Source: Mustelus asterias
Lineage: Eukaryota
DNA: 64,000 bases
Direction of reading: 5' to 3'
Assembly (NCBI RefSeq): GCF_964213995.1
Contig: NC_135810.1
Coordinates: forward strand, 118,916,001 to 118,980,000
In this document: piece after piece, positions 3,988 through 63,573 of the stretch
How the letters are laid out: each line of letters begins with the position of its first letter
Position numbering within the stretch: the stretch's first letter is position 1
The notes under the pieces: generated by a model
The model's input: the letters and a program-made list of their open reading frames with translations, nothing else
The model's database searches: none
What the model was told of the DNA's origin: nothing
Program-made: the position numbers and the translations under genes

Positions 3988-4318
3988 TGTGGTGAACCAT
4001 TGTTGGTTCCCACCAGGTAGTACTGAGCCAGGGTCTGGCCAGTACTATGAGTCTGTATATATGTTACTGTTGGGGTTAGGGTTGGGCTGTTCTACATGTT
4101 ACTGTTGGGGTTAGGGTTGGGCTGTTCTACCTGTAATATAGTTCTTGTGGTACATCCCAGTCGGGCTCCGCCTCCTGGGAGAGGTATAAAGGTCACTGCT
4201 CTGTCTGGGACCCTTTAGTCTGGGATCGCGTATTATATATGGTAGCTCTATTGTTGTAGTCAATAAAAGCCTTTATTTCCCCGAGTACCTCTAGCCTCGT
4301 GAGTTATATCGCGCATCA
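3988..4318 (+). mobile_element. Solo LTR inserted in a CR1 fragment
   Basis: TGTGGTG...GCATCA termini; 5-bp TSD ATGTG (3983-3987 and 4319-4323); TATAAA at 4185 and AATAAA at 4262; internal tandem duplication of about 35 bp. Confidence 0.85.
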
Positions 4319-5171: not shown

Positions 5172-5253
5172 AAAAATACAGATTGCTTCACAAATTTACA
5201 TATCGAGCTTGCGTAGAGCCACGCTAATCTTCTCTGTATCGTTCCAATCTTAG
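5172..5253 (-). pseudogene. U6 snRNA pseudogene lacking the 5' stem-loop
   Basis: Reverse complement CTAAGATTGGAACGATACAGAGAAGATTAGCGTGGCTCTACGCAAG...AAATTTGTGAAGCAATCTGTATTTTT aligns with U6 from about nt 25 to the 3' end, including the ACAGAGA box and AGC triad. Confidence 0.9.
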
Positions 5254-6223
5254 GACAACATAGAGTCATGTCTGTGACTGCCCTCTACAAGAGCGACTTG
5301 GCTAATTCAGCCCCCCTGCTTTCTCCCTGTAGCCCTGTAAATCTTTTTCTCCTCAGTTAATGATCCAATTCCCTTTCGAAGATCTCAACTGAATCTGTCT
5401 CCGGCTCACCCTCGGGCAGTGCGTTCCAGATGCCAACCACTCGATGCGTTGACTTTGCTGACCTGGGTTCAATCCTGGCCTCGGGTCATTATCGGTGTGG
5501 AGTTTGCACATTCACCCCGTGTCTGCGTGGGTTTCCTCCGGGTGCTCCATTTTCCTCCCACGGTCCAAAGATGTGCGGGTTAGATGGATTAGCCATGCTG
5601 AGTGTGCGGGGTTACGGGGATAGGGGGGTTATGGGGATAGGGCTGTTCCGGAGGAGCGTAAAAACCTTTTTCCTCATAGAATCATAGAATCCCTACAGTG
5701 CAGAAGGGACCAGTTGGCCCATCGAGTCTGCGCTGACTTGCCAACAGAGTATCTTACCCAGGCCCTCTCCCCCGCCCTATCCTGTATGTTGCCATTGCTC
5801 CTTTGGCCAATCACCTGAACTCTGTGCTTCGATGCTTCTGCCAAAGGGAAAAGTTTGTCCCCTTGGCGGCATAGTGGTTAGCACTGCTGCCTCACAGCGC
5901 CAGGGACCTGGGTTCGATTCCTGGCTTGGGTCACTGACTGTGTGGAGTTTGTGTATTCTCCCCGTGTCTGCGTGGGTTTCCTCTGAGTGCTCTGGTTTCC
6001 TCCCACAGTCCAAAGATGTATGGGTTAGCTTGATTGGCCATGCTAAATTGACCCTAGTGTCAGGGGGATTAGCAGGGTAAATGTGTGGGGTTACGGGAAT
6101 AGGGCCTAGTTGGGATTGTGGTCGTTACAGACTTGATGGGCCAAATGGCCTAATTCTGTACTGTGGGGATTTTATGATTCTATTTCTATGATTAGTTCAC
6201 TAAAGTCTTGTGGAGAGAGGACA

Positions 6224-6264
6224 GAGCCAATGTTTCGAGTCTGGATGACCCTTCGTCAGAGCTC
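6224..6264 (-). ncRNA. Minimal hammerhead ribozyme motif (family A) in a Penelope-like terminus
   Basis: Reverse strand reads GAGCU-CUGACGA-A-GGGUC-AUCCA-GACUC-GAAA-CA-UU-GGCUC, and stems I and II pair. A related, more decayed copy lies at about 7645-7685(+), with its tail resuming at 8023-8105. Confidence 0.6.
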
Positions 6265-8389
6265 TGAGAGAGCTAGCCAATTATTCCCATAACCCCAACT
6301 GGAAATCTGTCGCCCTTACCTGGTCTGGCCTACATGTGACTCCAGAGTCACAGCAATGTGGTTGACTCTCAACTACCCTCTGAAATGGCCTAGCGAGACA
6401 CTCAGTTCAAGGGCAATGAGGAATGGGCAATAAATGCTGGCCCAGCTAGTTACTCCCATGAATTTTTAAAAAAATTATAACCAGTCCAGGAAATCAATCA
6501 CGGATCAAGTGTTATCAATAAAGACATTTTATGTGACGCTCTCTCTGCCCCAGTCCAGAATCAGTCCAACTCCCTCCCGAAGATATCCATCATATCGTAA
6601 GAGGTGTCATAAAACTAGATCATTAAGATCTTTTTTCCGTAGTGCCCTTAGCTATAAAGGTTTGAATAATCTTCCCCTGTGAGATGTTGATTGGATTAAA
6701 TTTCCTAAACCTCTCATTCATCATTTTAATAATTTATTAATTAAAAGTAAGTTTAACAGCCAGAACTGACAAAATTAAAACCATCCCCCACTCCCCGCCG
6801 AGACTTTGAATGGATAAATTATCCACAAAAGGTTATCATTATAACAACTCAAGTACTTTTCCTGATCATTTTAACCTGTTCAAATAATCTTTCAAAATGA
6901 ATTGAAATAATGGCCTCTGATGGTGTGACCAGGTCCTGGGGGAGGGGGCTGGTTTAAACTGAAGCAATTATTGGTTCTGGTGACTCACAGAGGAACTAGA
7001 TTAGCACATGCAGTCAATTCCAGCCATCTTCTGTACCATCGAATCCCTACAGTGCAAAAGGAGGCCATTCGGTCCATCGAGTCTGCTCCGACCACAATCC
7101 CACCCAGGCCATGTCCCCGTAGCCCCACACATTTACCCTGCTAATCCCCCTGGCACTGGGGGCAAGTTAGCATGGCCAGTCAACCTAAACCACACATCTT
7201 TGGAGTGTGGGAGGAAACTGGAGCACCCGGAGGAAACCCACGCAGACACGGGGAGAACGTGCAGTCTCCACACAGACAGTCACCCGAGGCCGGAATTGAA
7301 CCTGGGTCCCTGGTGTTGTGAGGCAGCAGTGCTAACTGTGCCACCGTGCTGCCAGTAATATGTTTTATTACTGAATCAGTCATCAGGTAGGATTTTACTG
7401 TCAGGTTGCTTTCAGCGAGAGACTTAGGCAAAAGCTTTGTCTTAAAAAAAGAAAAGTGATGGAAGTATGTGGGAGTTTTTTCTTCATCATCGTGAGCTGT
7501 GGTGATCTGCAATGTGCAGTCTGAAAAGGTGGCAGAAGCAGATTCAAGGCTAACCTGTGAACTGGATTATTACTTGCAAAGGAATAATATACAGGGCTGA
7601 GGAAAAGAGTTGGGGCTGTGGTGTTGATTGGCTAGCTCTATCAAAGCTCTGACAAAGGGTCATCCAGACTCGAAACATTGACCATGTCCACTTTCCACAG
7701 ATGCACTGTTGCCTCACAGCAACCAGGAACCCAGGTTCGATTCCCGGCTTGGGTGACTGTCTATGTGGAGTTTGCACGTTCTCCCCCGTGTCTGCATGGG
7801 TTTCCTCCGGGTGCTCCGGTTTCCTCCCACAGTCCAAAGATGTGCGGGTTAGGTGGATTGGCCATGCTAAATTGACCCTTAATGCCCCGGGATGCATAGG
7901 TTAGAGGGATTAGTGGGGTAAATATGTGGGGTTACGGGGATAGGGCCTGGGTGGGATTGTTGTCGGTGCAGGCTCGATGGGCCGAATGGCCTCTTTCTGC
8001 ACTACAGGGATTCTACGATTCTATGCTGACAGACCTGCTGAGATTTTCCAGCATTTTTTGTTTTTATTTCAGATTTCCAGCATCCACAGTATTGTATTTT
8101 TATCTTTGAAAGAATCTCCTGGCTTGTGTAATTCTACAGCCTCTGATTGTCTTCAATGGTGGCATCACAACTAATGGCAAGATTATTGTCACTTGTTCCA
8201 TTTCACCATGGATTCTAACTACGAGAGAACAAGTTAGTCTCACTGAATGACTCTGCGGCAGAGGTGCTTTCTGAAAAGCAAGCTCTTCTTTCTGCTGAGT
8301 GCCCTAGATAGACACGAGAGGTTATTTGCAATATGTGTTCTATAGATCTGACTCAAACATCTGAAGGTGAGAAAAAATATTCTTACTGA

Positions 8390-8710
8390 TGAGGCGATGG
8401 CCTGGCGGTATTATCTCGAGATCATCAATCCAGCAACTCAACTGATGTTCTGGGGACCCGGGTTCGAATCCCGCCACGGCAGATGATGGAATTTGAATTC
8501 AATTTTTAAAAATCTGGAATTAAGAATCTACCATGAAACCATTGTCGATTGTCGGAAAAATCCCATCTGGTTCACTGATGTCTTTTAGGGAAGGAAATCT
8601 GCCGTCCTTACCCGGTCTGGCCTACATGTGGCTCCAGAGCCACAGCAATGTGGTTGACTCTCAACTGCCCTCGGGCAACTAGGGATGGGCAACAAATTCT
8701 GGCACTAGCA
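8390..8710 (+). mobile_element. tRNA-derived SINE (family B) with LINE-derived GGGCAATAAATGCTGG...GAATGAAT tail
   Basis: A-box-like TGGCCTGGCGG and B-box GGTTCGAATCC. Other copies at about 15062-16205 (split by CR1), 24400-24778(-), 38764-39455 (split by HE1) and 54312-54775. Confidence 0.75.
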
Positions 8711-10391
8711 GATGTTGATCTTCAGGTCTGCCAGGGCAGGAAGGGGCCAGCCCAGCCGCAATACCCCATCCTGTCAACGGTGACCATCCTGAGGTCAACG
8801 GTGAACCCCCATGTTCTGTGGGCCATTGCAATTCTTGCCAGGAGCTAGCAGGCCCAAAGAATCCCCCTTAGACATTTTATTGGGAAAATTCCACCCACAA
8901 TGTTTTGGCCTCAACTGCTTTCTATGGTAGAAAATTCCACAGGCTCACCACTCTCTGGGTGAAGAAATTTCTCCTCATTTCAGTTCTACATGGTTCACTC
9001 TGTATCCTTTAACTATGGCCCCTGGTTCTGAACACCTGCGCCATCGGGAACATCCTCCCTGCATCTACCCTGTCTAGTCCTGTTAGAATTTATAGGTTTC
9101 TGAGCTCATAAGAATCATAAGAACTAGGAGGGTGAGTGCGATCATGGCTGATCTCATCTTGGCCTGAATTCCACCATCCTGCCCTTCAAACCCTTACGAA
9201 TTAAAAACCACCTCTTCCTTAAATTTACTCAAAGTTCCGGAGATCCCCCCCCCCCCCCCTCTCTCTCATTCTTCTAAACTCCAGTGAATATAATCCTAAC
9301 CGACTCAATCTCTCCTCATACTTCACTCCCGCCATCCCCGGAATCAGCCTGGTAAAGCTTCGCTGCACTCCCGCTATCGCAAGGACATCCTTCCTCAGAT
9401 AAGGAGAGCTAACATGCACACAATACTCCAAGTGTGGCCTCACCAAGGCCCTGCATGATTGCAGCAAGACATCTCTGCTCCTTTGAAAGGCAGAACCGGC
9501 TCGAAGGGCCAAACGACCTACTCCTGCTTCTATCTTCTATGTTTCCAAGACTCACGACTCCCTGTCTTAAGTGGGCGAGCCCTTATTTTTGAACAGTAAC
9601 TTTTAGTTCCAGAGATAAAACAGATTGTCACGTTGTCAGGTTACTGTTCGAGGGAGGTATCTGTGTGCAAACTGGCTGCTGCACCGTGGCAGGGAAGACA
9701 TTTCATAAAGTATCTCATTGACTGTAAAGCACCGTGAGATGTCCTGAGGTGGTGAAAGGTGCTATATAAATGCAAGGTCTTCCTTTCTTCCTTAAGACTG
9801 TGTGTAGATGACAATATGTAGTCCAAAGATGTGCGGATTAGGTTGATTGGCCATGGTAAATTGCCCCTTAGTGTCAGGGGATTAGGAGGGTAAATAAGTG
9901 GGGTTATGGGGATGGGACCTGAATGATATTGTGGTCGGTGCAGGCTCGATTGGCCAAATGACCTCCTTCTGCACTGTAGATTCTATGATTCAATGAATGT
10001 AGGTATTGGCCATTGTCCATTGGTTACTGTTGAACACAGGAGATTGGAAATACTGAAAGTTCAGTGGGACGGCATGGTGACACGGTGGTTAGCACTGCTG
10101 CCTCACAGCACCAGGGGCCTGGGTTCAATTCCCGGCTTGGGTCACTGTCCATGCGGAGTTTGCACATTCTCCCCGTGTCTGTATGGGTTTCCTCCAGTTT
10201 CCTCCCACAGTTTGAAAGATGTGCTGGTTGGGTGCATTGACCCGAACAGGCGCAGGAGTGTGGCGACTAGGGCATTTTCACAGTAACTTCATTGCAGTGT
10301 TAATGTAAGCCTTACTTGTGACACTAATAAATAAACTTTACTTAACTTATCATTGTTGCTTCCTTTCACCTCTCACTCCACACCGTCTCAG

Positions 10392-10754
10392 GTTACGAAA
10401 GCAAAATTACGGTGTCCCAGCATCCCAGAGAAATCACCGCGTCAGTGGGAATGACAGCCACGATTGCTTGCGAGGCGCACCATCACAACGGTGCCCCTGA
10501 GCACACGGACATGTACTGGTACACTGGAGAGGAGCGGGACAGACCAATCCTGACCTTCTCGACAGACTCCGATTCCCTGTCTAGTCAAGATGGCCGCCTA
10601 TACGTTTGTGGCAATCTCTCCAACTTCTATAACGTCCTGGTCATAAACAACCTGACAGTGATGGACTCTGGACTTTATGTCTGCGAAGTAGCAGTCTCTC
10701 TACCTCCTCCTCACATGAGTGAATATGGAGAAGGAACTCAATTAACTGTGCGCG
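10392..10754 (+). CDS. CD28/CTLA-4-family receptor, V-set Ig domain exon
   Basis: Acceptor ...ccgtctcag| and donor |gtgagt, phase 1-1. Encodes YESKITVSQHP...TIAC...MYWY...LVINNLTVMDSGLYVCEVAVSLPPPHMSEYGEGTQLTVR. The C-x6-PPP-x5-GxGT spacing is identical to CTLA-4 CKVELMYPPPYYLGIGNGT. Confidence 0.9.
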
Positions 10755-10852
10755 GTGAGTAAAACAGACGCAATTGTCTCTTAATGACATCCTTTGTGGG
10801 TTTATTTAACGTATGTTTTATGTCTGATAAATCTATATAGTGCTATATAGTT

Positions 10853-11164
10853 GGGCGGCATGGTGGCACAGTGGTTAGCACTGCTGCCTCACAGCGCCAG
10901 GGACCCAGGTTCGATTTCCGGCTCGGGTCACTGTCTGTGCGGAATTTGCACGTTCTCCCCATGTCTGGGTGGGTTTCCTCCGGACGCTCCGGTTTCCTCC
11001 CACAGTCTGAAAGACGTGCTGGTTAAGCGTATTGGCCGTGCTAAATTCTCCCTCAGTGTCCCCAAATAGGTGCTGGAATGTGGCGACTTGGGGATTTTCA
11101 CAGTCACTTCATTGCAGTGTTAATGTAAGCCTACTTGTGACAATAATAAATAAACTTAAAACTT
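10853..11164 (+). mobile_element. HE1-type V-SINE, variant with TTTTCACAGT...GTGACA.TAATAAATAAACTT tail
   Basis: Same head and V-domain as HE1 but a different 3' part. Copies at about 10067-10345(+), 11441-11763(-), 14525-14822(-), 16415-16735(-), 21836-22146(+), 43423-43585(-), 52700-52967(-) and 58450-58700(+). Confidence 0.85.
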
Positions 11165-11196
11165 GATGGAAGAGAAGTTGGCAGATGGGATGTTAC

Positions 11197-11771
11197 TGTG
11201 ATAACCCCCATGATCTGCATAGAGAATCATTAATTGACCTCCCAGTTGGGCTTGTTGAATACGAGCTCCCAGAGGACTGGTAATTAGCCCACCAGGTGGA
11301 GTTCATATACAAAGCTCTATATAAAGCAAGACCCTGAGAGGTCCTTTAAGTCCCGGTTGGGACCTGTTGTGTTCACCACAGGATTATTGTTTATTTTAAT
11401 CCGTGCAATAAAACACGGTTCCTTCACAGCCAACTCCTGGAGTTTAAAGTTTAAAGTTTTTTAAGTTTATTTATCAGTCACAAGGAGGCTTACATTAACA
11501 CTGCGATGAAGTTACTTTGAAAATTCCCTAGTGCCACACTCCGGTGCCTGTTTGGGTACACTGAGGGAGAATTTAGCACGGCCAATGCAACTAACCAGCA
11601 TGTCTTTGGGCTGTGGGAGGAAACTGGAGCACCCGGAGGAAATCCATGCAGACACAGGAAGAATGTGAAGACTCCTCACAGACAGTGACTCAAACTGGGA
11701 ATCAAATCCAGGTCCCTGGCGCTGTGAGGCAGATGTGCTAACCATTGTGCCACCGTGCCACCCCTATTATA
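11197..11771 (+). mobile_element. Solo LTR interrupted by a SINE
   Basis: TGTGATA...TATTATA termini; 5-bp TSD GTTAC (11192-11196 and 11772-11776); internal TATATAAA and AATAAA; HE1 variant inserted at about 11441-11763. Confidence 0.6.
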
Positions 11772-13276
11772 GTTACCAACAGAGATCTTGATGAACTGCC
11801 TGGTCTATCAGATGGGATGGGTTTTTGGATTGATGGAACCAAGGTCTTAACAGTTCCACAATGTGACATATCAAAAAAAACCTCACGAGCATACCAAAAT
11901 ATTAAGTTGCAGGGGAAGGATTAAGGAAATTGAATCTGTTTCTTCTACAGCGGGGACCTCGGGGTAAACCAACTGAAGTTCCCACGGTTACATTAGATGT
12001 TTAAAACTCAATTCTCCAATATGATAGAGTGACACGGTGGCACAGTGGGATAAATGGTCTCCTTCTGAACTTGCCCCTTAGTGTCCCAAGATGCAAATGT
12101 TAGAGGGATTAGCAGGGTAAATGTGTGGGGTTACAGGGATAAGGGTTAGGTAGGGTTGTTGTCAGTGCAGACTCAATGGGCCAAATGGCCTCCTTCTGCA
12201 CTATAGGATTTCTATGATTCTGTGGTCAAAGACTCAAATACCAAATTAAAAAGGGGGAAGTTAAAAGGTGGAAATTCAAGGTGATTCACTCCAGCCAAAA
12301 TCAACACAATAGCGGATTTATGAGCTGAGGGCAGCTGGTGAAGCAGACTGGTTGAGGAGGTTAAGGGCAAAACACTGCAGATGTTGGAAATCTGCGATAA
12401 AGATAGGAAATGCTGGAAATACTCAGCACAGGTCTGTGGACAGAGAAAGAAGGTGAACGCCTCATCACTTATATAACAATTGAGGGGGATAGTCAGGAGG
12501 ATAGGGTTTTTAGCTCACCTCTGGGATGTAAACGTCACCGACAAGGCCTTATTACCCATCCCTAATTGCCCTTCAGAAGGTGGCGGTGAGCTCCCTTCTT
12601 GAACTGCTGCAGACCAGGAGGTGCAGGTACACCCACAGTGCTGTTAGGGAGGGATTTTGACTAGCAACAGTGAAGGAACGGCTGATATTTTTCCAAGTCA
12701 GGATGGTGAGTGGCTTGGAGGGAATCTTGCAGGTGGCGGTGTTCCCATAGAAATCATAGGATCCCTACAGTGCAGAAGAGGCCCATTCGGCCCATCGAGT
12801 CTGCACCAACTCTCTGACAGAGCATCTTACCCAGGCCCACCTCCCACCCTCTCCCCGTAACCCCACTAATTTACCCCACTAATCCCTCTTAACCTACACA
12901 TCTTTGGACATAATAAGGATGCAATTTAGCACGGCCAATCCACCTAACCTGCACATCTTTGGAGTGTGGGAGGAAACCGGAGCACCCGGAGGAAACCTAC
13001 GCAGACACAGGGAGAACGTGCAGACTCCGCACAAAATTACACTCCATTGCACCTGCTGTCCCATTCTTCTAGGTAGCTACCAAATAAACCTGTTGGACTT
13101 TAACCTGGTGTTGTTAAAACTCTTACTGTGTTTACCCCAGTCCAACGCCGGCATCTCCACATCATTCTTCTAGGACAGAAACATGGGTTTGGAAGGGTTG
13201 TCTATTGGAAAGGCAGGCTTTTGGGGCCTAATGCCATTTTCTGCTGCTGCTAAAATGTCTTACAATTTATTTTCAG

Positions 13277-13389
13277 AGCCAAATGCATGTGAGACATCGA
13301 AGGCCTCCCAACAGATATGGCACAACATTGGATTCTCAGTCATTTTAATCTATAGCCTCGCTGTCACTCTAACGACGGTGGTGCTCGGT
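13277..13389 (+). CDS. CD28/CTLA-4-family receptor, stalk plus transmembrane exon
   Basis: Acceptor ttattttcag| (phase 1, in frame with the V exon) and donor GGT|gtgagt (phase 0). Encodes EPNACETSKASQQIWHNIGFSVILIYSLAVTLTTVVLG, with a stalk Cys and a YxxxxT motif (CD28 YSLLVT, CTLA-4 YSFLLT). Confidence 0.88.
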
Positions 13390-13452
13390 GTGAGTAATTT
13401 AAAACAAATTATTATTGCAATTGTTCATAGTGTGGTCAAGCATTCATGGGTT

Positions 13453-14421
13453 GCTATCAGGGGAAGTCTCACAACACCAGGTTAAAGTCCAACAGGTTTA
13501 TTTGGTAGCATGAGCTTTCGGAGCACTGCCCCTTCATCAGGTGAGTGAGCCACAGCAATGTAAAGTCATAGAGATTTACAGCATGGAAACAGGCCCTTCG
13601 GCCCAACTTGTCCATGCCACCCTTTTTTTTTAAACCCCTAAGCTAATCCTAATTGCCCGCATTTGGCCCATATCCCTCTATTCCCATCTTACTCATGTAA
13701 CTATCTAAATGCTTTTTAAAAGACAAAATTGTACCCATCTCTACTACTACTTCTGGCAGCTTGTTCCAGACACTCACCACCCTCTGTGTGAAAAAATTGC
13801 CCCTCTGGACCCTTTTGTATCTCTCCCCTCTCACCTTAAACCTATGCACTCTAGTTTTACACTCCCCTACCTTTGGGAAAAGATATTAACTTTCTAGCTG
13901 ATCTGTGCCCCTCATTATTTTATAGACCTCTTTAAGATCACCCCTCAGCCCCCTATGCTCCAGAGAAAGAAGTCCCAGTCCCAGTCCCAACTACAGCAAT
14001 GTGGTTGACTCTCAACTGCCCTCAGGCAACTAGGGATGGGCAATAAATGTAAGCCAGCCAGCGATGCACATGTCCCACAAATGAATACAATAATACAGAT
14101 AATCTGGTCATTGTCACATTGTTGTTTTTGGGAACTTGCTGTGTGCAAATTGACTGCTGCGTTTCCTATACTCCCGAAAGATGTGCTGGTTAGGTGCATT
14201 GGCCATGCTAAATTCTCCCGTAGTGTACCCGAACAGGCGCCGGAGTGTGGTGACTGGGGGATTTTCACAATAACTTCATTGACTCACTTGATGAGGGAGC
14301 AGTGCTCCGAAAGCTCATGCTACCAAATAAACCTGTTGGACTTTAACTTGGTGTTGTGAGACTTCTTACTGTGCCCACCCCAGTCCAACACCGACATCTC
14401 CACATCATGGCTATCAGGGGA
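13453..14421. mobile_element. Composite insertion bounded by inverted Penelope-like termini
   Basis: Direct repeat GCTATCAGGGGA at 13453-13464 and 14410-14421; inverted termini at about 13465-13546 and 14282-14409; the interior copies 16106-16401 and contains a later CR1 fragment (13562-13992, TSD ACAGCAATGT). Confidence 0.7.
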
Positions 14422-15103
14422 TATAGTCGACATGGGTCAATGCCCATAATAGGATTCACAGCACAGTAACAGCCCGTTTAGCTGTTAGTGGTTCACTGGG
14501 TAGCATTCTTACCTTTGAATCACAAAGTTTAAAGTTTATTGATTAGTGTCACAAGTAGGCTTACATTAACACTGCAATGAAGTTACTGTGAGAATTCCCC
14601 AGAGGCCACACTCCGGTACTCGGGTACACTGAGGGAGAATTTAGCATGACCAATGCACCTAACCAGCATGTCTTTCGGACTGTGGGAGGAAACCGGAGCA
14701 CCCGGAGGAAACCCACACAGACACGGAGAAACGTGTAGACTCGGCACAGACAGTGACCCAAACCGGGAATCGAACCTGGGTCCCTGGCACTGCGAGGCAG
14801 CAGTGCTAGCCACTGTACCGCCTACAAGGCTCTCGGTTTAAGTCCCATCCGAGGGCCTGAGCACAAAAATCACGGATGACCCTCCAGTTGAGTACCAAGC
14901 GAGTGCTACACTGTTGGAGGAGCTGTCTTTTCATCAAGGAGTTAAACTGAGGGCCCAACCTGCCTACTCGGGTGGATGATCCCGTGAAACCATTTTGAAG
15001 GAGATCAGGGGAGTTCTCCCTTGGGCCCTGCCCAATACTTATCCCTCAATCAACATCACATGGGGGGGGTAATGGCCCAGACATTAATCCAGAAACTCAG
15101 CTA

Positions 15104-15908
15104 ATAAGACCATCAGATATAGGAGCAGAATTAGGCCATTCGGCCCATCGAGTCTGCTCCGCCATCCAACCATGGCTGATATGATTCTCCTGCCTTCTCC
15201 TCGTAACCCTTGATCCCTTTATTGATCAAGAACCTATCTATCTCTGTCTTAAAGGCACCCAATGACCTGGCTTCCACAGCCTTCTGTGGCAATGAGTGCC
15301 ACAGATTCACCACCCTCTGGCTGAAGAAATACCTCCTCATCTCAGTTTTAAAGGAGCGTCCCTTCACTCTGGGGTTGTGCCCTCGAGTTCTAATCTTTCC
15401 CACTAGTAGAAACATCTTCTCCAAATCCATTCTATCTCGGCCTCTCAGTATTCTGTAAGTTTCAATTAGATACCCCCTCATCCTTCTAAACTCCATCGAG
15501 TACAGACCCAGAGTCCTCAACCGTTCCTCATACGACAAGCTCTTCATTCCTGGGATCATTCTTGTGAACCTCCTCTGGACCCCCTCCAAGGCCAGCACAT
15601 CCTTCCCTAGGTATGGGGCCCAAAACTGCTCACAATACTCCAAATGGGGTCTGACCAGAGCCTTATACTGCCTCAGCAGCACATCGCTGCTCTTGTATTC
15701 TAGCCCTCTAGAAATGAATGCTAACATTGAATTTGGCCTCCTAACTGCCAGCTGAACCTGCATGTTAACCTTAAGAGAGTTCTGAACAGGACTCCCAAGT
15801 CCCTTTGTGCTTCAGATTTCCGAAGCCTTTCCCCATTTAGAAAATAGTCCCCATCTCTATTCTTCATACCAAAGTGCATAACCTCACACTTTCCCACATT
15901 GTATTCCA
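15104..15908 (-). mobile_element. CR1 LINE 3' fragment nested in a family-B SINE
   Basis: ORFs 15131-15763 and 15721-15966 encode a frameshifted CR1 RT C-terminus; host SINE sequence resumes on both sides. Confidence 0.85.
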
Positions 15909-17026
15909 TGGTTCTGGGGAACTGGGTTCGAATCCCGCCACGGCAGATGGTGGAATTTGAATTCAATAAAAAATATCTGAAGTTAAGAATCTACTGATGA
16001 CCATGAAACCATTGTCGATTGCCGGAAAAACCCATCTGGTTCACTAATGTCCTTGAGGGAAGGAATTCTGCTGTCCTTACCCGGTCTGGCCTACATGTGA
16101 CTCCAGAGCCACAGCAATGTGGTTGACACTCAACTGCCCTCAGGCAACTAGGGATGGGCAATAAATGCTGGCCAGCCAGCGACGTTCATGTCCCACGAAT
16201 GAATACAATAAAACAGATAATCTGGTCATTGTCGCATTGCTGTTTTTGGGATCTCGCTGTGCGCAAATTGACTGCTGCATTTGCTATTCTCCCGAAAGAC
16301 GTGCTGGTTAGGGTGCATTGGCCGTGCTAAATATCTCCCTCAGTGTACCTGAACAGGGGCCGGAGTCTGGCGACTGGGGGATTTTCACAGTAGCTTCATT
16401 GCAGTGTTAAAAAGTTTATAAAGTTTAAAGTTTATTTATTAGTGTCACAAGTAGGCTTACATTAACACTGCAATGAAGTTACTGTGAAAATCCCCTCGTT
16501 ACCACATTCTGGCGCCTGTTCAGGTACACTGAGGGAGAATTTAGCACGGCTAACGCACCTCTAACCAGCACGTCTTTCGGACTGTGGGAGGAAACCGGAG
16601 CACCCGGAGGAAACCCACGCAGACACGGGGAGAACGTGCAGACTCCGCACAGACAGTGACCCAAGCCGGGAATCAAACCCAGGTCCCTGGCACTGTGAGG
16701 CAGCAGTGCTAACCACTGTGCCACCGTGCCGCCCTTTATTTGACCCTTAATGGTGTTTGATCACCACATGTAATGTAAGCCCACTTGTGACGCTAAGAAA
16801 TAAACTTAAACTAAAAATTTGGATGGGCCAAATGGCCTCCTTCTGCACTGTAGGGATTCTATGATTCGAAGTATTTATTCAATTCTCTTTTGAAAGTTAC
16901 CATTCTACCTGCTTCCAGCATGTTCTCTGGCAGCTCATTCCAAGTCGCTGCATTAAAATATCATCTCACCTCTAATTCTTTAGCCAATTAATCTGACTCA
17001 TTAGATTTCTCTCTGTCATTGCCCAG

Positions 17027-17042
17027 AGCCTGTGTAGCCTAG
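17027..17042 (+). CDS. Candidate 16-nt micro-exon of the CD28-family gene (SLCSL)
   Basis: Acceptor tttctctctgtcattgcccag| and donor AG|gtaagt; phase 0 to 1, compatible with the TM exon donor. Confidence 0.4.
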
Positions 17043-17234
17043 GTAAGTGATGGGAAAAGAAACGAATCGAAAAATCCTCGCCATGCGCCCTCACAGCCCA
17101 CACAACACACTTTTTTTTGCAATGCAAAATACTCTTCAAGGAAAGAGAAAGCTAATCATTTCACCAGATTTCTGCCCTGAAGCCTTTCATTTACTAGTTC
17201 CTGTCCTCACATTGACCTCAGAGCTTGCCCACAG

Positions 17235-17321
17235 CTAAACTTTGCCCAGATCTGCTGCTATTGACCACTTCCGCATCGAGAGAGAGCGGCCAGAGGAATA
17301 GTCTTAAAGAGACGGGCAAAG
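17235..17321 (+). CDS. Candidate 87-nt cytoplasmic exon of the CD28-family gene
   Basis: Acceptor ttgcccacag| and donor AAG|gtaagt; open in phase 1-1 (AKLCPDLLLLTTSASRESGQRNSLKETGK); non-repetitive sequence. Confidence 0.4.
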
Positions 17322-18177
17322 GTAAGTGCTAAAGATCTGAACTCCCCTGTAGACATTAGACTGTTCAAGAGCAATGCCACGCAAGATCTTTGGTATACGT
17401 AAAATACAGTGCGTGAAAGTGAGTGCAACAAATGGTATATATAAAATACACAAGGCTCTATTCTTATAGAAATTGAAAGATGCGTAGCTGAAATTAACTT
17501 TGCAATTAAAACAGATGTGACATTGCCTTTCTCACTATTTTAAGTTGATTTTTATAAAAATGTGTTAATGCCTCCTCTCAATTAACGGACAGAGAAACAT
17601 CATAAGAACATATCAAGCCTTTTAGACAGAAGGAGGCCATTCAGTCCATCAAGTCTGTACCCACCGCAATCCCACCCAGGCTCTTTTCCTGTATCCCTAA
17701 TTTACCCTGATAATCCCCCTGACACTAAGGGTCAATTTAGCCTGGCCAATCCACCTAACCTACACATCTTTGGACTGCGGGAGGAAACCAGAGCACCCAG
17801 AGGAAACCCACGCAAACATGGGGAGAACGTGCAAACTCCACACAGACAGTGACCCAAGGCCGGAATCAAACCCGGGGTCCCAGGTGCTGTGAGGCAGCAG
17901 TGCTAACCTGCTAACCACTGTGCCACTGTGCCGCTCTGCAGTGCACAGAGTGTGCGAGATTCTTCTTGAAACTGCCGCTGAAAAAAACAGCAAGATTTAC
18001 TCCAGTTTTTACCCGAATTTGAGACTTAGAATTCTTTTGGGAGAATCGCTCCCAATATCTTTAATGTCTAGAAATGTATCGATCTCTATCTTGGAGATAC
18101 TAATGACTGGGTTTCCACAGCCCTGTGGATTGAGCATTCCAAACATTCACCACCCTCTGACTGAAGAAATTCCACAT

Positions 18178-19379
18178 CTTGAGAAGGTGACCAAAGAGGT
18201 GGATGAGGGTAAAGCAGTTGATGTGGTGTATATGGATTTCAGTAAAGTGTTTGATAAGGTTCCCCACGGTAAGCTATTGCAGAAAATACGGAGGCATGGG
18301 ATTGAGGGTGATTTAGCGGTTTGGATCAGAAATTGGCCAGCTGTAAGAAGGCAGAGGGTGGTGGTTGATGGGAAATGTTCATCCTGGAGTTCAGTTACGA
18401 GTGGTGTACTGCAAGGATCTGTTTTGGGGCCACTGCTGTTTGTCATTTTTATAAATGACCTGGATGAGGGCGTAGAAGGCTGTGTTAGTAAATTTGCGGA
18501 TGACACTAAAGTCGGTGGAGTTGTGGACAGTGAGGAAGGATGTTGCAGGTTACAGAGGGACATAGATAAGCTGCAGAGCTGGGCTGAGAGGTGGAAAATG
18601 GAGTTTAAGGTGGAAAAATGTGAGGTGATTCACTTTGGAAGGAGTAGCAAGAATACAGAGTACTGGGCTAATGGTAAGATACTTGGCAGTGTGGATGAGC
18701 AGAGAGATCTCGGTGTCCATGTGCATAGATCCCTGAAAGTTGGCACCAAGGTTGATAGGGTTGTTAAGAAGGCGTACAGTGTGTTAGCTTTTATTGGTAG
18801 AGGGATTGAGTTTCGGAGCCATGATGTCATGTTGCAGCTGTACAAAACTCTGGTGCGGCCCCACTTGGAGTATTGCGTACAGTTCTGGTCGCCGCATTAT
18901 AGGAAGGATGTGGAAGCATTGGAAAGGGTGCAGAGGAGATTTACCAGGATGTTGCCTGGTATGGTGGGAAGGTCTTATGAGGAAAGGCTGAGTGACTTGA
19001 GGCTGTTTTCGTCAGAGAGAAGAAGGTTAAGAGGTGACTTAATAGAGGCATACAAGATGATCAGAGGATTAGATAGGGTGGACAGTGAGAGCCTTTTTCC
19101 TCGGATGGTGATGGCTAGCACGAGGGGACATAGCTTTAAATTGAGGGGTGATAGATATAGGACAGATGTCAGAGGTAGGTTCTTTACTCAGAGAGTAGTA
19201 AGGGCGTGGAATGCCCTGCCTGCAGCAGTAGTGGACTCGTCAACATTAAGGACATTTAAAGGGTCATTGGATAAACATATGGATGATATTGGAATAGTGT
19301 AGGTTAGATGGGCTTTAGATTGGTTTCACAGGTCGGCGCAACATTGAGGGCCGAAGGGCCTGTACTGCGCTGTAATGTT
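18178..19379 (+). mobile_element. 5'-truncated CR1 LINE (RT domain); tail remainder at 21616-21636
   Basis: ORF 17920-19302 from EKVTKEVDEG onward contains DFSKVFDKV, QGSVLGP and FADD. A shorter copy of the same subfamily lies at about 50240-50735. Confidence 0.92.
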
Positions 19380-21615
19380 ACATAGAACATAGAACATAGA
19401 ACAGTACAGCACAGAACAGGCCCTTCGGCCCACGATGTTGTGCCGAGCTTTATCTGAAACCAAGATCAAGCTATCCCACTCCCTATCATCCTGGTGTGCT
19501 CCATGTGCCTATCCAATAACCGCTTAAATGTTCCTAAAGTGTCTGACTCCACTATCACTGCAGGCAGTCCATTCCACACCCCAACCACTCTCTGCGTGAA
19601 GAACCTACCTCTGATATCCGTCCTGTATCTCCCACCACGAACCCTATAGTTATGCCCCCTTGTAACAGCTCCATCCACCCGAGGAAATAGTCTTTGAACG
19701 TTCACTCTATCTATCCCCTTCATCATTTTATACACCTCTATTAAGTCTCCCCTCAGCCTCCTCCGCTCCAGAGAGAACAGCCCTAGCTCCCTCAACCTTT
19801 CCTCATATGACCTACCCTCCAAACCAGGCAGCATCCTGGTAAATCTCCTCTGCACTCTTTCCAGCGCTTCCACATCCTTCTTATAGTGAGGTGACCAGAA
19901 CTGCACACAATATTCCAAATGTGGTCTCACCAAGGTCCTGTACAGTTGCAGCATAACCCCACGGCTCTTAAACTCCAACCCCCTGTTAATAAAAGCTAAC
20001 ACACTATAGGCCTTCTTCACAGCTCTATCCACTTGAGTGGCAACCTTTAGAGATCTGTGGATATGGACCCCAAGATCTCTCTGTTCCTCCACAGTCTTCA
20101 GAACCCTACCTTTGACCCTGTAATCCACATTTAAATTTGTCCTACCAAAATGAATCACCTCACATTTAACAGGGTTAAACTCCATTTGCCATTTTTCAGC
20201 CCAGCTTTGCATCCTATCTATGTCTCTTTGCAGCCTACAACAGCCCTCCACCTCATCCACTACTCCACCAATCTTGGTGTCATCAGCAAATTTACTGATC
20301 CACCCTTCAGCCCCCTCCTCTAAGTCATTAATAAAAATCACAAAGAGCAGAGGACCAAGCACTGATCCCTGCGGCACACCGCTAGCAACCTGCCTCCAAT
20401 CCGAAAATTTTCCATCGACCACCACCCTCTGTCTTCGGTCAGACAGCCAGTTACCTATCCAATCGGCCAACTTTCCGTCTATCCCACACCTCCTCACTTT
20501 CATCATAAGCCGACCATGGGGGACCTTATCAAACGCCTTACTAAAATCCATGTATATGACATCAACTGCCCTACCTTCATCAACACACTTAGTTACCTCC
20601 TCAAAAAATTCTATCAAATTTGTGAGGCACGACTTGCCCTTCACGAATCCGTGCTGACTATCTCGGATTAATCCGCATCTTTCTAAATGGTCGTAAATCC
20701 CATCCCTAAGGACCCTTTCCATCAATTTACCAACCACCGAAGTAAGACTAACCGGTCTATAATTACCAGGGTCATTTCTATTCCCTTTCTTAAACAGAGG
20801 AACAACATTCGCCATTCTCCAGTCCTCTGGCACCATCCCCGTGGACAGCGAGGACCCAAAGATCAACGCCAAAGGCTCTGCAATCTCTGCAATCCCTTGC
20901 CTCCCACAGAATCCTAGGATACATTTCATCAGGCCCAGGGGACTTATCGACCTTCAGTTTATTCAAAACTGCCAAGACATCCTCCCTCCGAACATCTATT
21001 TCCTCCAGCCTATTAGCCTGTAACACCTTCTCTTCCTCAAAAACATGGCCCCTCTCCTTGGTGAACACTGAAGAAAAGTATTCATTCATCACCTCGCCTA
21101 TCTCTACTGCCTCCATACACAAGTTCCCACTACTGTCCTTGACCGGCCCTAACCTCACCCTGGTCATTCTTTTATTCCTCACATAAGAGTAAAAAGCCTT
21201 GGGGTTTTCCTTGATCCGACCCGCCAAGGACTTCTCATGTCCCCTCCTAGCTCTCCTAAGCCCCTTTTTCAGCTCATTCCTTGCTAACTTGTAACCCTCA
21301 ATCGAGCCATCTGAACCTTGTTTCCTCATCCCTACATAAGCTTCCCTCTTCCTTTTCACAAGACATTCCACCTCTTTCGTGAACCATGGTTCCCTCACTC
21401 GGCCATTTCCTCCCTGCCTGACAGGAACATACCTATCAAGGACATCCAGTATTTGTTCCTTGAAAAAGTTCCACTTTTCATTAGTTCCTTTCTCTGACAG
21501 TTTCTGTTCCCAACTTATGCCCCCTAACTCTTGCCTAATCGCATCATAATTACCCCTCCCCCAATTGTAAACCTTGCCCTGCCGTACGGCCCTATCCCTC
21601 TCCATTGCAATAACA
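19380..21615 (-). mobile_element. 5'-truncated CR1 LINE with one frameshift
   Basis: ORFs 20790-21656 and 19466-20929 form one ORF2 broken near 20880-20895; (TTCTATG)n tail; TSD AATGTT (19374-19379 and 21616-21621). Confidence 0.92.
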
Positions 21616-22177
21616 AATGTTCTATGTTCTATGTTCAGTCCTAAATGGTCTGCCACTTATTCTAGACTTCCTCCCCACCCCTCACCCCTAACCCAGCCAA
21701 GGGAAACATCCTCCCCTCAGCTACCCTGTCCAGCCTGTAAGAACTTTGTATGTCTCAATGAGATCACCTCTCATTCTTCTAAACTCTAGAGAGTAAAGGC
21801 CTGGCCTCCTCAATCTCTGCTCATAGGATCAGACTGGGCAGCACAGTGGCACAGTGGTTAGCACTACTGCCTCACAGCGCCAGAGACCCGGGTTTGACTC
21901 CTGCCTTGGGTTACCGTCTGTGTGGAGTCTGTACGTTCTCCCTGTATGTGCGTGGGTTTCCTCCGGGTGCTCCGGTTTCCTCCCACAGTCTGAAAGACGT
22001 GCTGGTTAAGGTGCATTGGCCGTGCTAAATTCTCCCTCAGTGTACCCGAACAGGCGCTGGAGTGTGGCGACTGGGGGATTTTCACAGTAACTTCATTGCA
22101 GTGTTAATGTAAGCCTAATTGTGACACTAATAAATAAACTTTAACTTTGGTGACCCTTCACTGCCCTCCCTCTACAG

Positions 22178-22188
22178 CAAGTCATGCC
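22178..22188 (+). CDS. Candidate 11-nt micro-exon of the CD28-family gene (ASHA)
   Basis: Strong acceptor ccttcactgccctccctctacag| and weak donor GCC|gtaaat; phase 1 to 0, linking exon 17235-17321 to 22298. Confidence 0.25.
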
Positions 22189-22297
22189 GTAAATATGTGT
22201 ATATTTTGTTTGATGTTCTTATGCTGGATAAGGCAGCGAGAAGTCAGGGGTCTGATATTCAGCACTGTACTGACACTGCAACTGAAATTCATTCCAG

Positions 22298-22495
22298 ACT
22301 CTCCTATTTCTTGGTCGCAAACCCCCTGGGAGCAAACTCAATCCTGAAGAAGCATCCGGAAGCCAAGGGGAATCTCACCGGAGTTATTTCAGAGGACGTG
22401 CAGTGCCTCTGAGTGCCGACCGGGCCAGAGAGGCGCATAACCAGGAGTACGAAGATATGGCACTCATCAGAACTATCAGTCAGAACCCGAGGTAG
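22298..22495 (+). CDS. CD28/CTLA-4-family receptor, terminal cytoplasmic exon
   Basis: Acceptor aattcattccag| in phase 0. Encodes TLLFLGRKPPGSKLNPEEASGSQGESHRSYFRGRAVPLSADRAREAHNQEYEDMALIRTISQNPR*. TLLFL-GRK completes the TM helix if spliced directly from 13389; YEDM is a YxxM motif. Confidence 0.75.
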   Translation, partial: TLLFLGRKPPGSKLNPEEASGSQGESHRSYFRGRAVPLSADRAREAHNQEYEDMALIRTISQNPR

Positions 22496-33450: not shown

Positions 33451-33455
33451 CCTAT

Positions 33456-44676: not shown

Positions 44677-44808
44677 TTACTCAAAATAGCCTTTATTCCG
44701 CAGAAATCTCGTAGCATCGTTGAAGCCCTTGTAATACAGCGATTCCATCGTCACTTGGCCCGGTGGGAACAGCGCCTGACTGAGCCTCACAAAATTGGCA
44801 ATGGACAG
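44677..44808 (-). CDS. PNPLA4: Patatin-like phospholipase domain-containing 4, last coding exon
   Basis: LSIANFVRLSQALFPPGQVTMESLYYKGFNDATRFLRNKGYFE*, colinear with the human PNPLA4 C-terminus as I recall it (LSLANLVRLNQALFPP...KENWFE); acceptor gaactacag|. Confidence 0.95.
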   Translation of the reverse strand: MSIANFVRLSQALFPPGQVTMESLYYKGFNDATRFLRNKGYFE

Positions 44809-47401: not shown

Positions 47402-47554
47402 GATAAAGTCCTGCTTTGCAATCGTGATGTACAAATTGCTTTGAGATTTGTCCTGCGGGCAGATATCCAATTTCCCACTGAAAGGTGAAATAGTCATGGT
47501 CTGTCCAGTGGATAAGATTGGAAGTCTGTTTGTTAACCCACCATCAATCCAAGC
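47402..47554 (-). CDS. PNPLA4: PNPLA4 coding exon with catalytic DGG motif
   Basis: AWIDGGLTNRLPILSTGQTMTISPFSGKLDICPQDKSQSNLYITIAKQDFI; acceptor gtttttcgttag| and donor |gtaagt; phase 0-0. Confidence 0.96.
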
Positions 47555-55084: not shown

Positions 55085-55150
55085 TTCTCCTTTATATTCC
55101 ACTGCCTTGATCCCAGCATAAAATGGCACAAAGCTACTGGCGAGAAGAAC
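55085..55150 (-). CDS. PNPLA4: PNPLA4 coding exon
   Basis: VLLASSFVPFYAGIKAVEYKGE; acceptor ttctcatcag| and donor |gtaagt; 66 nt, phase 0-0. Confidence 0.96.
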
Positions 55151-61175: not shown

Positions 61176-61311
61176 CGTTATCAGGTCCTCCCTGGTGGGA
61201 TAGGAGGAGATCAAACAATTTTTCAGTGTCTTGACGTTTGTGACGGACACGTGGAGTCGATTGTGAGCTTTCTCATGGGCATCAACAGAAAGAATGGATT
61301 CCATCCCCTCC
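61176..61311 (-). CDS. PNPLA4: PNPLA4 coding exon
   Basis: (R)EGMESILSVDAHEKAHNRLHVSVTNVKTLKNCLISSYPTREDLIT; acceptor ttcctcctcag| and donor |gtaact; phase 2-0. Confidence 0.96.
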
Positions 61312-63478: not shown

Positions 63479-63573
63479 CTCAACTGCTTCATAAAGTCAT
63501 ATCCGGGTGTTACGGCTCCAAGTTTCTGCCTCCGGACATCGGCTGCAAATCCGTAAGTAAATTCTTTGCATTG
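63479..63573 (-). CDS. PNPLA4: PNPLA4 coding exon (most 5' exon in the window)
   Basis: QCKEFTYGFAADVRRQKLGAVTPGYDFMKQL(R); acceptor cttctgctcctcag| and donor |gtaaga; phase 0-2. The exon carrying the GxSxG nucleophile must lie beyond 64000. Confidence 0.96.

What the first reader, a model, noticed from the sequence alone, without database searches (positions are those of the whole stretch)
10392..22495. Hidden CD28/CTLA-4-family costimulatory receptor gene in a shark
Seen: three phase-compatible exons in repeat-rich DNA, only partly visible in the ORF track, carry four independent family hallmarks. These are a PPP loop spaced exactly like CTLA-4 MYPPPY, a stalk cysteine (EPNAC; compare CTLA-4 EPCP and CD28 HLCP), the TM YxxxxT motif (YSLAVT) and a cytoplasmic YxxM (YEDM). 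Exon phases (1,1,0) follow the CD28 pattern. Inference: a disulfide-linked dimeric B7-family receptor that is not CD28, CTLA-4 or ICOS. I recall that comparative surveys have named extra non-human members (CD28X, CD28H-like); I cannot tell here whether this gene is one of those or new.
Basis: partly seen in the sequence, partly recalled or inferred. Interest (0 to 1): 0.9.

Follow-up and report, generated by a model that had tools for sequence, protein, structure and literature searches.

The report
Shark CD28X costimulatory receptor gene
The three exons are a real immune-receptor gene of the CD28/CTLA-4 family, but it is the shark copy of CD28X, a member already named in 2024, so it is a sound annotation and not a new kind of gene.

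Summary
Exons 10392-10754 (IgV), 13277-13389 (stalk and transmembrane) and 22298-22495 (tail and stop) have canonical splice sites and phases 1/1/0. They are collinear with predicted 204-241 aa proteins of other sharks and rays.

The V exon is a Pfam V-set domain (E 2.9e-14). Its best single-domain solved relatives are CTLA-4 chains.

Among 11 elasmobranch orthologues the loop is kept in 10 of 11, the stalk Cys in 8 of 10, YxxxxT in 11 of 11 and EYEDM in 11 of 11.

These are the features by which Quiniou et al. 2024 (PMC11599192) define CD28X: YxCx6PPPx4/5GxG, EYEDM, an optional YxxxxT, and synteny with pnpla4. A five-exon gene that I read as PNPLA4 lies tail-to-tail 22 kb downstream. That name rests on recall; no tool could give it.

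The V domain is sister to the Scyliorhinus torazame protein (96/93). It is separate from the Chiloscyllium and Callorhinchus CD28-like genes (AU p 0.006).

Verdict: already known; low interest. The scan had not noted this gene on other DNA.

The parts
10392..10754 (+). IgV exon, phase 1 at both ends. It encodes 120 whole codons, YESKITVSQHP...GEGTQLTVR.
   Evidence: Sequence, translation. Pfam V-set E 2.9e-14. 68% identity to Stegostoma XP_048388075, E 2.7e-48. 77% identity to Scyliorhinus torazame GCB71653.
10682..10735 (+). F strand, FG loop and start of the G strand: C-EVAVSL-PPP-HMSEY-GEG. This is the CD28X/CTLA-4-type loop with the G-strand bulge motif.
   Evidence: The only match to the pattern in the six-frame scan of the window. 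Aligned without a gap to the MYPPPY...GNG stretch of 4n8p_A. Fits the motif YxCx6PPPx4/5GxG given in PMC11599192 section 20.
13277..13389 (+). Stalk and transmembrane exon, phase 1 in and phase 0 out: (E)PNACETSKASQQIWHNIGFSVILIYSLAVTLTTVVLG. The stalk Cys codon is at 13288-13290 and YSLAVT at 13351-13368.
   Evidence: tblastn with P0001 gives E 5.7e-10. 66% identity to the S. torazame protein. YxxxxT is kept in 11 of 11 elasmobranch orthologues and the stalk Cys in 8 of 10.
22298..22495 (+). Cytoplasmic exon of 65 codons plus TAG. It starts with the last hydrophobic residues of the membrane span (TLLFLG), then RKPPGSK... EYEDM is at 22445-22459.
   Evidence: tblastn with P0001 gives E 5.4e-16. 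Both tails count 65 residues, so they can be laid side by side without a gap (my count); the local alignment gives 73% identity over 64 columns. EYEDM is kept in 11 of 11 orthologues.
13390..22297 (.). Intron of 8.9 kb filled with retroelement debris.
   Evidence: Reverse-transcriptase ORFs at 17920-19302 (+) and 19466-20929 (-): Pfam RVT_1 E 9.6e-21 and 8.4e-33.
44677..44808 (-). Last exon and stop of the convergent neighbour, which I read as PNPLA4: LSIANFVRLSQALFPPGQVTMESLYYKGFNDATRFLRNKGYFE*.
Evidence: Stop-to-stop pieces; ag/gt sites and phases. No tool named it (blank; one search gave only chance-level hits; blank).
47402..47554 (-). Neighbour exon holding WIDGGLTNRLPIL...SPFSGKLDICPQDKS. 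The DGG is of the kind that carries the catalytic Asp in patatin-type lipases (established knowledge).
   Evidence: Phase 0 at both ends. Pfam, NCBIfam, the PDB and the homologue search gave nothing usable for this 51-91 aa piece.
55085..55150 (-). Neighbour exon: VLLASSFVPFYAGIKAVEYKGE.
   Evidence: Phase 0 at both ends.
61176..61311 (-). Neighbour exon: EGMESILSVDAHEKAHNRLHVSVTNVKTLKNCLISSYPTREDLIT.
   Evidence: The acceptor needs one base to complete a codon, which fits the phase-2 donor of the exon before it.
63479..63573 (-). Neighbour exon: QCKEFTYGFAADVRRQKLGAVTPGYDFMKQL. The first exon or exons of this gene lie beyond the end of the window.

Best explanation
This is the CD28X gene of a shark: the orthologue of the CD28-family member that Quiniou et al. 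named in 2024.

What is shown:
- Three of its presumably four coding exons are in the window and are intact. The leader exon was not found.
- The protein is a type I membrane protein with one IgV domain. Its FG loop (SLPPPH) and G-strand GxG sit exactly where CTLA-4 has MYPPPY and GNG.
- It has a short stalk with one cysteine, a transmembrane helix with a YxxxxT motif, and a tail of about 59 residues after the hydrophobic start of the last exon. The only conserved tyrosine of the tail lies in EYEDM.

What is inferred, by analogy with CD28 and CTLA-4:
- Two chains pair through the stalk disulfide and the YxxxxT helix contact.
- The PPP loop contacts a B7-type ligand on an antigen-presenting cell.
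- The phosphorylated YEDM recruits the p85 SH2 domains of PI3K (YxxM). There is no GRB2 site, because Asn is missing at +2, so the signal would be activating and PI3K-biased.
For: - Exon anatomy and translations.
- V-set domain at E 2.9e-14.
- CTLA-4 chains are the best single-domain solved relatives (4n8p_A at 1.1e-8; 4kkn_A, 9dq4_A, 9dq5_C and 1dqt_A at 4-6e-7), with the PPP loop and GxG aligned without a gap.
- Orthologues cover all three exons in order: Stegostoma/Rhincodon, Hemiscyllium, Chiloscyllium, Heterodontus, S. torazame and four rays.
- Per-exon identity to S. torazame is 77%, 66% and 73%.
- Motifs kept in orthologues: loop 10 of 11, stalk Cys 8 of 10, YxxxxT 11 of 11, EYEDM 11 of 11.
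- The paper's definition of CD28X is YxCx6PPPx4/5GxG, a strictly conserved EYEDM, a possible YxxxxT, and synteny with pudp, sts, anos1, nlgn4x and pnpla4.
- A phase-compatible five-exon gene that I read as PNPLA4 ends 22 kb downstream on the other strand.
- In the V-domain tree the window is sister to S. torazame (96/93), inside an 11-row elasmobranch EYEDM clade (88/90).
- One clade of elasmobranch plus gar, paddlefish, smelt, caecilian and crocodilian proteins is not rejected (AU p 0.283). A clade with Chiloscyllium LOC122555512 and the Callorhinchus 'CD28 homolog' is rejected (p 0.006).
- In Chiloscyllium plagiosum the orthologue and LOC122555512 lie on records of different length, 121.7 and 88.2 Mb, so on different chromosomes.
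- Skate-like Logan contigs of 1220-1267 nt encode 196 aa running from the V domain to the tail. I infer they are spliced transcripts of the orthologue.
Against: - There is no RNA evidence for this locus.
- No leader exon was found in the 10.4 kb upstream.
- The ML tree does not recover all EYEDM proteins as one clade. The label needs 4 changes and the backbone is open.
- The AU groups were named after I had seen the tree.
- No canonical CD28, CTLA-4, ICOS, CD28H or PD-1 sequence could be put in the tree.
- The paper's accession lists are in supplements that are closed, so I could not check that the database orthologues are the very sequences it calls CD28X.
- No tool named the neighbour as PNPLA4. 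Searches were blank, and one search gave only chance-level hits.
- YEDM is not unique to this group. The Callorhinchus 'CD28 homolog' has IYEDM, and section 17 of the paper mentions a YEDM in CD28H.
- Ligand, dimer and PI3K coupling are untested everywhere.
Confidence: 0.85

Rival explanations
1. It is one of the three chondrichthyan CD28/CTLA4 co-orthologues of the CD28/CTLA4/ICOS cassette, not CD28X.
For: The paper says the cassette genes also have P-[P/L]-P followed by GxG, usually a YxxxxT, and a Tyr motif in the tail. NCBI labels the orthologues 'CTLA-4-like' or 'CD28-like'.
Against: - No second V exon of this kind lies in the 64 kb.
- The likely neighbour is PNPLA4, a CD28X marker.
- EYEDM is strictly kept, whereas the cassette's third gene has EYxNM.
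- The orthologue lies on a different chromosome-sized record from Chiloscyllium LOC122555512.
- The AU test rejects a clade with that gene and the Callorhinchus 'CD28 homolog' (p 0.006).
- Caveat: I did not show that those two are cassette genes.
Confidence: 0.05
2. It is a decaying or silent copy: the three exons survive, but the gene has lost its leader or promoter and is not expressed.
For: No leader exon was found in 10.4 kb upstream. There are no RNA data. No protein of this species appeared in the protein searches. The locus is swamped by retroelements.
Against: - All three exons are open and all six splice sites are canonical.
- The structural Cys, Trp and Tyr-x-Cys residues and all four motifs are intact (one search lists invariant C26, W42, Y95, C97, P104-106 and G114).
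- Identity to S. torazame is even across the exons, at 66-77%.
- A first intron longer than 10 kb is ordinary in shark genomes (general knowledge).
Confidence: 0.07
3. It is a further, unnamed member of the CD28 family that only resembles CD28X.
For: The ML tree does not join the elasmobranch EYEDM clade to the gar/paddlefish and caecilian/crocodilian EYEDM-type proteins. Identity to those is only 29-38% in the V domain. I could not see the paper's accession list.
Against: The paper states that cd28x exists in sharks and rays with exactly these motifs and this synteny. Joint monophyly is not rejected (AU p 0.283). Epaulette shark, a species the paper uses, has a 72%-identical orthologue.
Confidence: 0.03

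Closest known systems
CD28X (Quiniou et al., Front Immunol 2024, PMC11599192). Database orthologues: Scyliorhinus torazame GCB71653, Heterodontus francisci XP_067889236, Hemiscyllium ocellatum XP_060682866, Stegostoma tigrinum XP_048388075.
   Same: One IgV domain; YxCx6PPPx5GxG; stalk Cys; YxxxxT in the membrane span; EYEDM in the tail; the same exon order; a likely PNPLA4 neighbour; 66-77% identity per exon to the nearest orthologue.
   Different: Nothing of kind. This copy has a third cysteine in the V domain (LYVCGN). Two rays share it; the other sharks have R or S there. Its leader exon was not located.
CTLA-4 (solved chains 4n8p_A, 4kkn_A, 1dqt_A)
   Same: Best solved single-domain relatives. 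The PPP loop and the G-strand GxG are in the same register. There is a stalk cysteine, and a YxxM-type tyrosine motif in the tail (tail motifs).
   Different: The loop is SLPPPH, not MYPPPY. The tail has EYEDM, not YVKM, and lacks the C-terminal PYxxP. The genomic neighbourhood differs, and the gene is lost in mammals.
CD28
   Same: Family architecture, PPP loop, YxxxxT dimerisation motif, and a YxxM site for PI3K.
   Different: CD28 of bony vertebrates usually lacks the G-strand GxG and has Y-M-[N/D]-x, which also binds GRB2/GADS. This gene has GEG and no Asn at +2.
Chondrichthyan CD28/CTLA4 cassette genes. Likely examples: Callorhinchus 'CD28 homolog' XP_007893994 and Chiloscyllium LOC122555512 (XP_043557471).
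   Same: PxP loop, mostly with GxG; YxxxxT; a Tyr motif in the tail.
   Different: Only 27-29% identity in the V domain. They form a separate starred clade with turtle proteins (99/93). A joint clade is rejected. In Chiloscyllium they lie on another chromosome-sized record.
CD28H / TMIGD2
   Same: Single V domain, CD28-family architecture.
   Different: CD28H has an E-I-P loop motif, a Y-x-N-x tail motif and fsd1/stap2 synteny. None of these is present here.

Membership tests
CD28X | Single extracellular IgSF V domain, then stalk, membrane span and short tail. | tested here: met
   Pfam V-set E 2.9e-14 on the V exon. A hydrophobic stretch IGFSVILIYSLAVTLTTVVLG continues into TLLFLG and is followed by basic residues. 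No second Ig exon lies between the exons.
CD28X | V-domain motif YxCx6PPPx4/5GxG. | tested here: met
   YVC-EVAVSL-PPP-HMSEY-GEG. The motif is as given in section 20 of PMC11599192.
CD28X | Strictly conserved EYEDM in the cytoplasmic tail. | tested here: met
   NQEYEDMALIR at 22439-22471. Present in 11 of 11 elasmobranch orthologues.
CD28X | YxxxxT in the membrane span (present in some species only). | tested here: met
   YSLAVT at 13351-13368. Present in 11 of 11 elasmobranch orthologues; absent in the gar and paddlefish proteins.
CD28X | Synteny with pudp, sts, anos1, nlgn4x, pnpla4. | tested here: inconclusive
Five collinear, phase-compatible minus-strand exons at 63.6-44.7 kb end in a stop 22 kb from this gene's stop. 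No library or search named them: searches were blank, and one search gave chance-level hits only. The other four markers are not in the window.
CD28X | Groups with CD28X sequences in a tree. | tested here: inconclusive
   It lies inside an 11-row elasmobranch EYEDM clade (88/90) and is sister to S. torazame (96/93). A union with the gar, paddlefish, smelt, caecilian and crocodilian EYEDM-type proteins is not recovered, but is not rejected either (AU p 0.283). The paper's reference accessions are in closed supplements.
CD28X | Transcribed and spliced as modelled. | not testable with these tools
No holder run is on record as RNA. There is indirect support only: 1.2-kb Logan contigs that encode the skate orthologue from the V domain to the tail.
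CD28/CTLA4/ICOS cassette (CD28, CTLA-4, ICOS or their chondrichthyan co-orthologues) | Lies in a run of three consecutive CD28-like genes. | tested here: not met
   There is one V exon of this type in 64 kb, with the next tblastn hit at E 1.4. The downstream neighbour is a lipase-like gene on the other strand. Limit: the window shows only 10 kb upstream.
CTLA-4 | [M/L/I]-[Y/F]-P-P-P-Y loop with GxG; YVKM-type tail motif. | tested here: not met
   GxG and PPP are present, but the flanks are S-L and H, and the tail has EYEDM.
CD28 | PPP loop without GxG; tail motif [D/E/V/I]-Y-M-[N/D]-[M/I/V/T]. | tested here: not met
   GEG is present. The tail has Y-E-D-M.
CD28H (TMIGD2) | E-I-P in the loop; Y-x-N-x in the tail; fsd1/stap2 synteny. 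| tested here: not met
   The loop is S-L-P-P-P and the tail motif is Y-E-D-M. Synteny markers were not looked for.

The most novel reading that the evidence does not exclude
CD28X is a working fourth receptor for B7-type ligands, which sharks, rays, basal bony fish, crocodilians, birds and turtles keep and mammals have lost. It would be a disulfide-linked dimer that uses a CTLA-4-like PPP loop to compete with the CD28/CTLA4 cassette receptors for the same ligands, yet signals positively and only through PI3K. This locus would then give a clean, compact gene model for testing that in a shark. Nothing here excludes it and nothing here shows it.
Probability: 0.3. Interest if true: 0.6.

Novelty: already known. 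Interest (0 to 1): 0.22.

Why it matters
As a discovery it matters little. The family member was named and described in sharks and rays in 2024, and close orthologues are already in the protein databases, though under misleading names ('CTLA-4-like', 'CD28-like', 'uncharacterized').

As annotation it is useful:
- It gives exact exon coordinates for a gene that no protein search returned for this species.
- It shows the likely PNPLA4 linkage within one 64-kb stretch.
- It confirms that loop, stalk cysteine, YxxxxT and EYEDM are kept together across elasmobranchs.

CD28X has no published function that I could find. Searches returned only the naming paper. So the open question stays the same: which ligand does it bind, and does it stimulate or inhibit.

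Tried and rejected
- Leader exon. I scanned upstream 1-10391 for ATG-started hydrophobic peptides ending at a phase-1 donor, and ran tblastn with six orthologue leaders. Nothing resembles the orthologue leaders. A 'PLKW' hit at 6377 lies in a stretch that I recognise as a common shark repeat; that is recall, and I did not count its copies. Two single-copy candidates remain unsupported: 295-334 (MRRFFIILFVILL, then G|gt) and 7459-7501.

- Naming the neighbour. I tried Pfam on stop-to-stop pieces and on trimmed exons, NCBIfam, PDB sequences, the word-indexed homologue search on the 91-aa piece and the ESM Atlas (closed). All were blank or at chance level. One search was blank because only proteins of 50-159 aa were candidates. 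My first strict motif scan for patatin-type N-terminal motifs found nothing. Those exons probably lie beyond the end of the window.

- Canonical references. The profile search with 18 family members returned 22 proteins, none named CD28, CTLA-4 or ICOS of bony vertebrates. The tree therefore lacks them.

- Other readings considered and rejected: CD28H (no E-I-P, no YxNx), and an antigen-receptor V segment (no recombination context looked for; the exon splices to a stalk/TM exon as in the orthologues).

Full report
**Observation**

- The V exon runs 10392-10754. A pyrimidine tract and ag precede it and G|gtgagt follows. It is 363 bp, that is 2 bases, 120 codons and 1 base, so it is phase 1 at both ends.
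- The second exon runs 13277-13389 (ttttcag before it, GGT|gtgagt after it). It is 113 bp, so it enters in phase 1 and leaves in phase 0.
- The third runs 22298-22495 (cattccag before it) with 65 codons and TAG.

In the ORF list only pieces of these exons show.

The introns carry SINE-like repeats. The 8.9-kb intron between the last two exons also carries reverse-transcriptase ORFs (RVT_1, E 8.4e-33 and 9.6e-21). The window has no N.

**Is it more than chance?**

- The V exon is a Pfam V-set domain (E 2.9e-14, 53.6 bits against a cut-off of 26). The two short exons match no Pfam family, as expected.
- A full HMMER pass of the V exon over 1.84 billion representatives gave 157 proteins at E up to 1e-3, 21 at up to 1e-10 and one at up to 1e-30. 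The best is a 241-aa protein of Stegostoma/Rhincodon (E 2.7e-48, 68% identity).
- I laid that protein back on the window with tblastn. The three best hits are exactly the three exons, in order: E 6.6e-53, 5.7e-10 and 5.4e-16. The next hit is at E 0.08.
- The pattern C...PxP...GxG occurs once in the six frames of the window. The V exon has no paralogue in the window; the next tblastn hit is at E 1.4.

**What it is**

A second search, with the Stegostoma protein, found 8 proteins. They come from Hemiscyllium, Chiloscyllium, Heterodontus, Scyliorhinus torazame, Hemitrygon, Mobula and Hypanus. NCBI calls them 'CTLA-4-like', 'CD28-like' or 'uncharacterized'.

The nearest is S. torazame GCB71653, with 77%, 66% and 73% identity in the three exons taken apart. 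Its tail and the window's tail exon both count 65 residues, so they can be laid side by side without a gap (my count). This supports the 13389^22298 junction.

Among 11 elasmobranch orthologues:
- the loop motif is present in 10 of 11 (the Narcine model lacks that part)
- the stalk cysteine in 8 of 10 (absent in Hemitrygon and Hypanus)
- YxxxxT in 11 of 11
- EYEDM in 11 of 11

No protein of the window's own species appeared in these searches.

**Comparison with what is in print**

Quiniou et al. 2024 (PMC11599192) extend the family to nine members. I read the outline and sections 10, 15, 16 and 23, plus passages.

They define CD28X by:
- YxCx6PPPx4/5GxG
- a strictly conserved EYEDM
- a possible YxxxxT
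- a synteny block with pudp, sts, anos1, nlgn4x and pnpla4

The window's protein reads YVC-EVAVSL-PPP-HMSEY-GEG, YSLAVT and EYEDM, which fits each point. The three chondrichthyan cassette genes (the CD28/CTLA4 co-orthologues) share PxP, GxG and YxxxxT. So only EYEDM, position and phylogeny can separate them from CD28X. CD28H is excluded by its E-I-P loop and its YxNx tail.

Two library searches for CD28X found only this paper among relevant ones.

**Position**

On the minus strand I found five stop-to-stop pieces that make collinear exons with ag/gt sites and matching phases. They are 63573-63479, 61311-61176, 55150-55085, 47554-47402 and 44808-44677, the last with the stop. The gene is convergent with the receptor gene, and the two stops are 22 kb apart.

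From memory these exons look like PNPLA4. They include a DGG of the kind that holds the catalytic Asp of patatin-type lipases, and the protein ends soon after it.

I could not get a tool to name the gene. Pfam, NCBIfam, PDB sequences and the homologue search (limited to 50-159 aa) gave nothing usable. So the synteny criterion is likely met but formally inconclusive.

There is independent support that the gene lies outside the cassette:
- In Chiloscyllium plagiosum the orthologue sits on a 121.7-Mb record, and the CD28-like LOC122555512 on an 88.2-Mb record.
- In Hemitrygon the two records are 203.0 Mb and 94.5 Mb.

**Tree**

I built the tree on the V domain alone: 30 rows, 120 columns, IQ-TREE with LG+C20.

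- The window is sister to S. torazame (96/93).
- It lies inside a clade of the 11 elasmobranch EYEDM rows (88/90).
- Chiloscyllium LOC122555512 and the Callorhinchus 'CD28 homolog' form another clade with turtle proteins (99/93).

Against my reading, the backbone is open. The gar/paddlefish/smelt and caecilian/crocodilian EYEDM-type groups do not join the elasmobranch clade in the best tree, and the label needs 4 changes.

AU tests:
- All these held as one clade costs 2.06 log-likelihood units, p 0.283, so it is not rejected.
- The elasmobranch clade held with LOC122555512 and the Callorhinchus gene costs 26.9 units, p 0.006, so it is rejected.

I named both groups after seeing the tree, which weakens the tests. 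Canonical CD28, CTLA-4, ICOS, CD28H and PD-1 are missing from the tree, because the profile search (22 proteins) did not reach them and PDB sequences cannot be passed on.

**Solved relatives**

The search returned 4757 distinct PDB sequences at E up to 10, most of them antibodies. Of the 60 shown, the best single-domain one is 4n8p_A (E 1.1e-8). The table labels it 'Uncharacterized protein'; I recall it as a monotreme CTLA-4. Four more chains are named CTLA-4 (E 4.1e-7 to 5.6e-7). None of the 60 is a CD28, ICOS or PD-1 chain. The alignment to 4n8p_A runs without a gap from the F-strand Cys through PPP to GxGTQ.

**How it most likely works**

Shown:
- one V domain with a CTLA-4-type loop in register
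- two N-x-S/T sequons (NLS, NLT)
- one stalk cysteine
- a membrane span with YxxxxT
- a tail whose only conserved tyrosine is in EYEDM

Inferred from the established behaviour of CD28 and CTLA-4, and from the paper's discussion:
- a covalent homodimer through the stalk cysteine, stabilised by YxxxxT
- ligand contact through the PPP loop, probably with a B7-family protein
- PI3K p85 recruitment to phospho-YxxM, without a GRB2 site, because Asn is lacking at +2

The direction of the signal (costimulation) is a guess that the paper shares.

**What is missing**

- Expression. Five runs hold the exon, none of them on record as RNA. Indirect support: Logan contigs of 1220-1267 nt encode a 196-aa skate-like orthologue from the V domain to the tail, which I infer to be spliced mRNA.
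- The leader exon. It was not found in the 10.4 kb upstream.
- Structure prediction and the gene context of orthologues.

**Verdict**

It is a real, apparently intact gene. It is the orthologue of the already named CD28X, so I rate novelty as already known and interest as low.

The value lies in a clean gene model for a species in which no protein search returned it, and in the likely PNPLA4 linkage seen within one window.

Noticed in passing
P0057 (Osmerus mordax XP_067116649, named 'uncharacterized protein cd28'): A teleost (smelt) protein has the PPP loop with GNG and a QEYEDM tail, and is sister to the gar EYEDM-type protein in the V-domain tree (98/94). The 2024 paper says cd28x was not detected in any teleost. 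It may be a surviving teleost CD28X, or a CD28 with a changed motif. No teleost CD28 was in the tree for comparison.
   Followed up: partly
P0008 (Rhinatrema bivittatum XP_029457705): A caecilian protein with LPLPPP, YSVGLT and QEYEDM groups with crocodilian proteins (85/78). The paper lists turtles, birds and crocodiles for tetrapod cd28x and does not mention amphibians.
   Followed up: no
window 44677-63573, minus strand: Five exons of a lipase-like gene that I read as PNPLA4 from recall, convergent with the receptor gene. Its first exon or exons lie beyond the end of the window. No tool could name it.
   Followed up: partly
window 10604-10606 (Cys in LYVCGN of the V exon): A third cysteine in the V domain. 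Hemitrygon and Hypanus share it, but the other shark orthologues have Arg or Ser there and Leucoraja has His. It may be unpaired.
   Followed up: no
P0159 (Chiloscyllium plagiosum XP_043548348, isoform X2): A predicted 216-aa isoform lacks the membrane span (25 residues) but keeps the stalk and the tail. This recalls the soluble CTLA-4 splice form (recalled). It is a prediction only.
   Followed up: no
window 30445-34394, minus strand: An apparently full-length LINE between the two genes. Its ORF2 has 1001 aa with endonuclease and RVT_1 domains. A 312-aa ORF lies upstream of it.
   Followed up: partly
P0116 (Carcharodon carcharias XP_041039503, 'CTLA-4-like'): Its loop reads E-I-P-P-P with GEG, the form the paper gives as primordial for CD28H-type genes. 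Yet the paper says CD28H seems to be lacking in the great white shark. It may be one of the CD28H-like paralogues.
   Followed up: no
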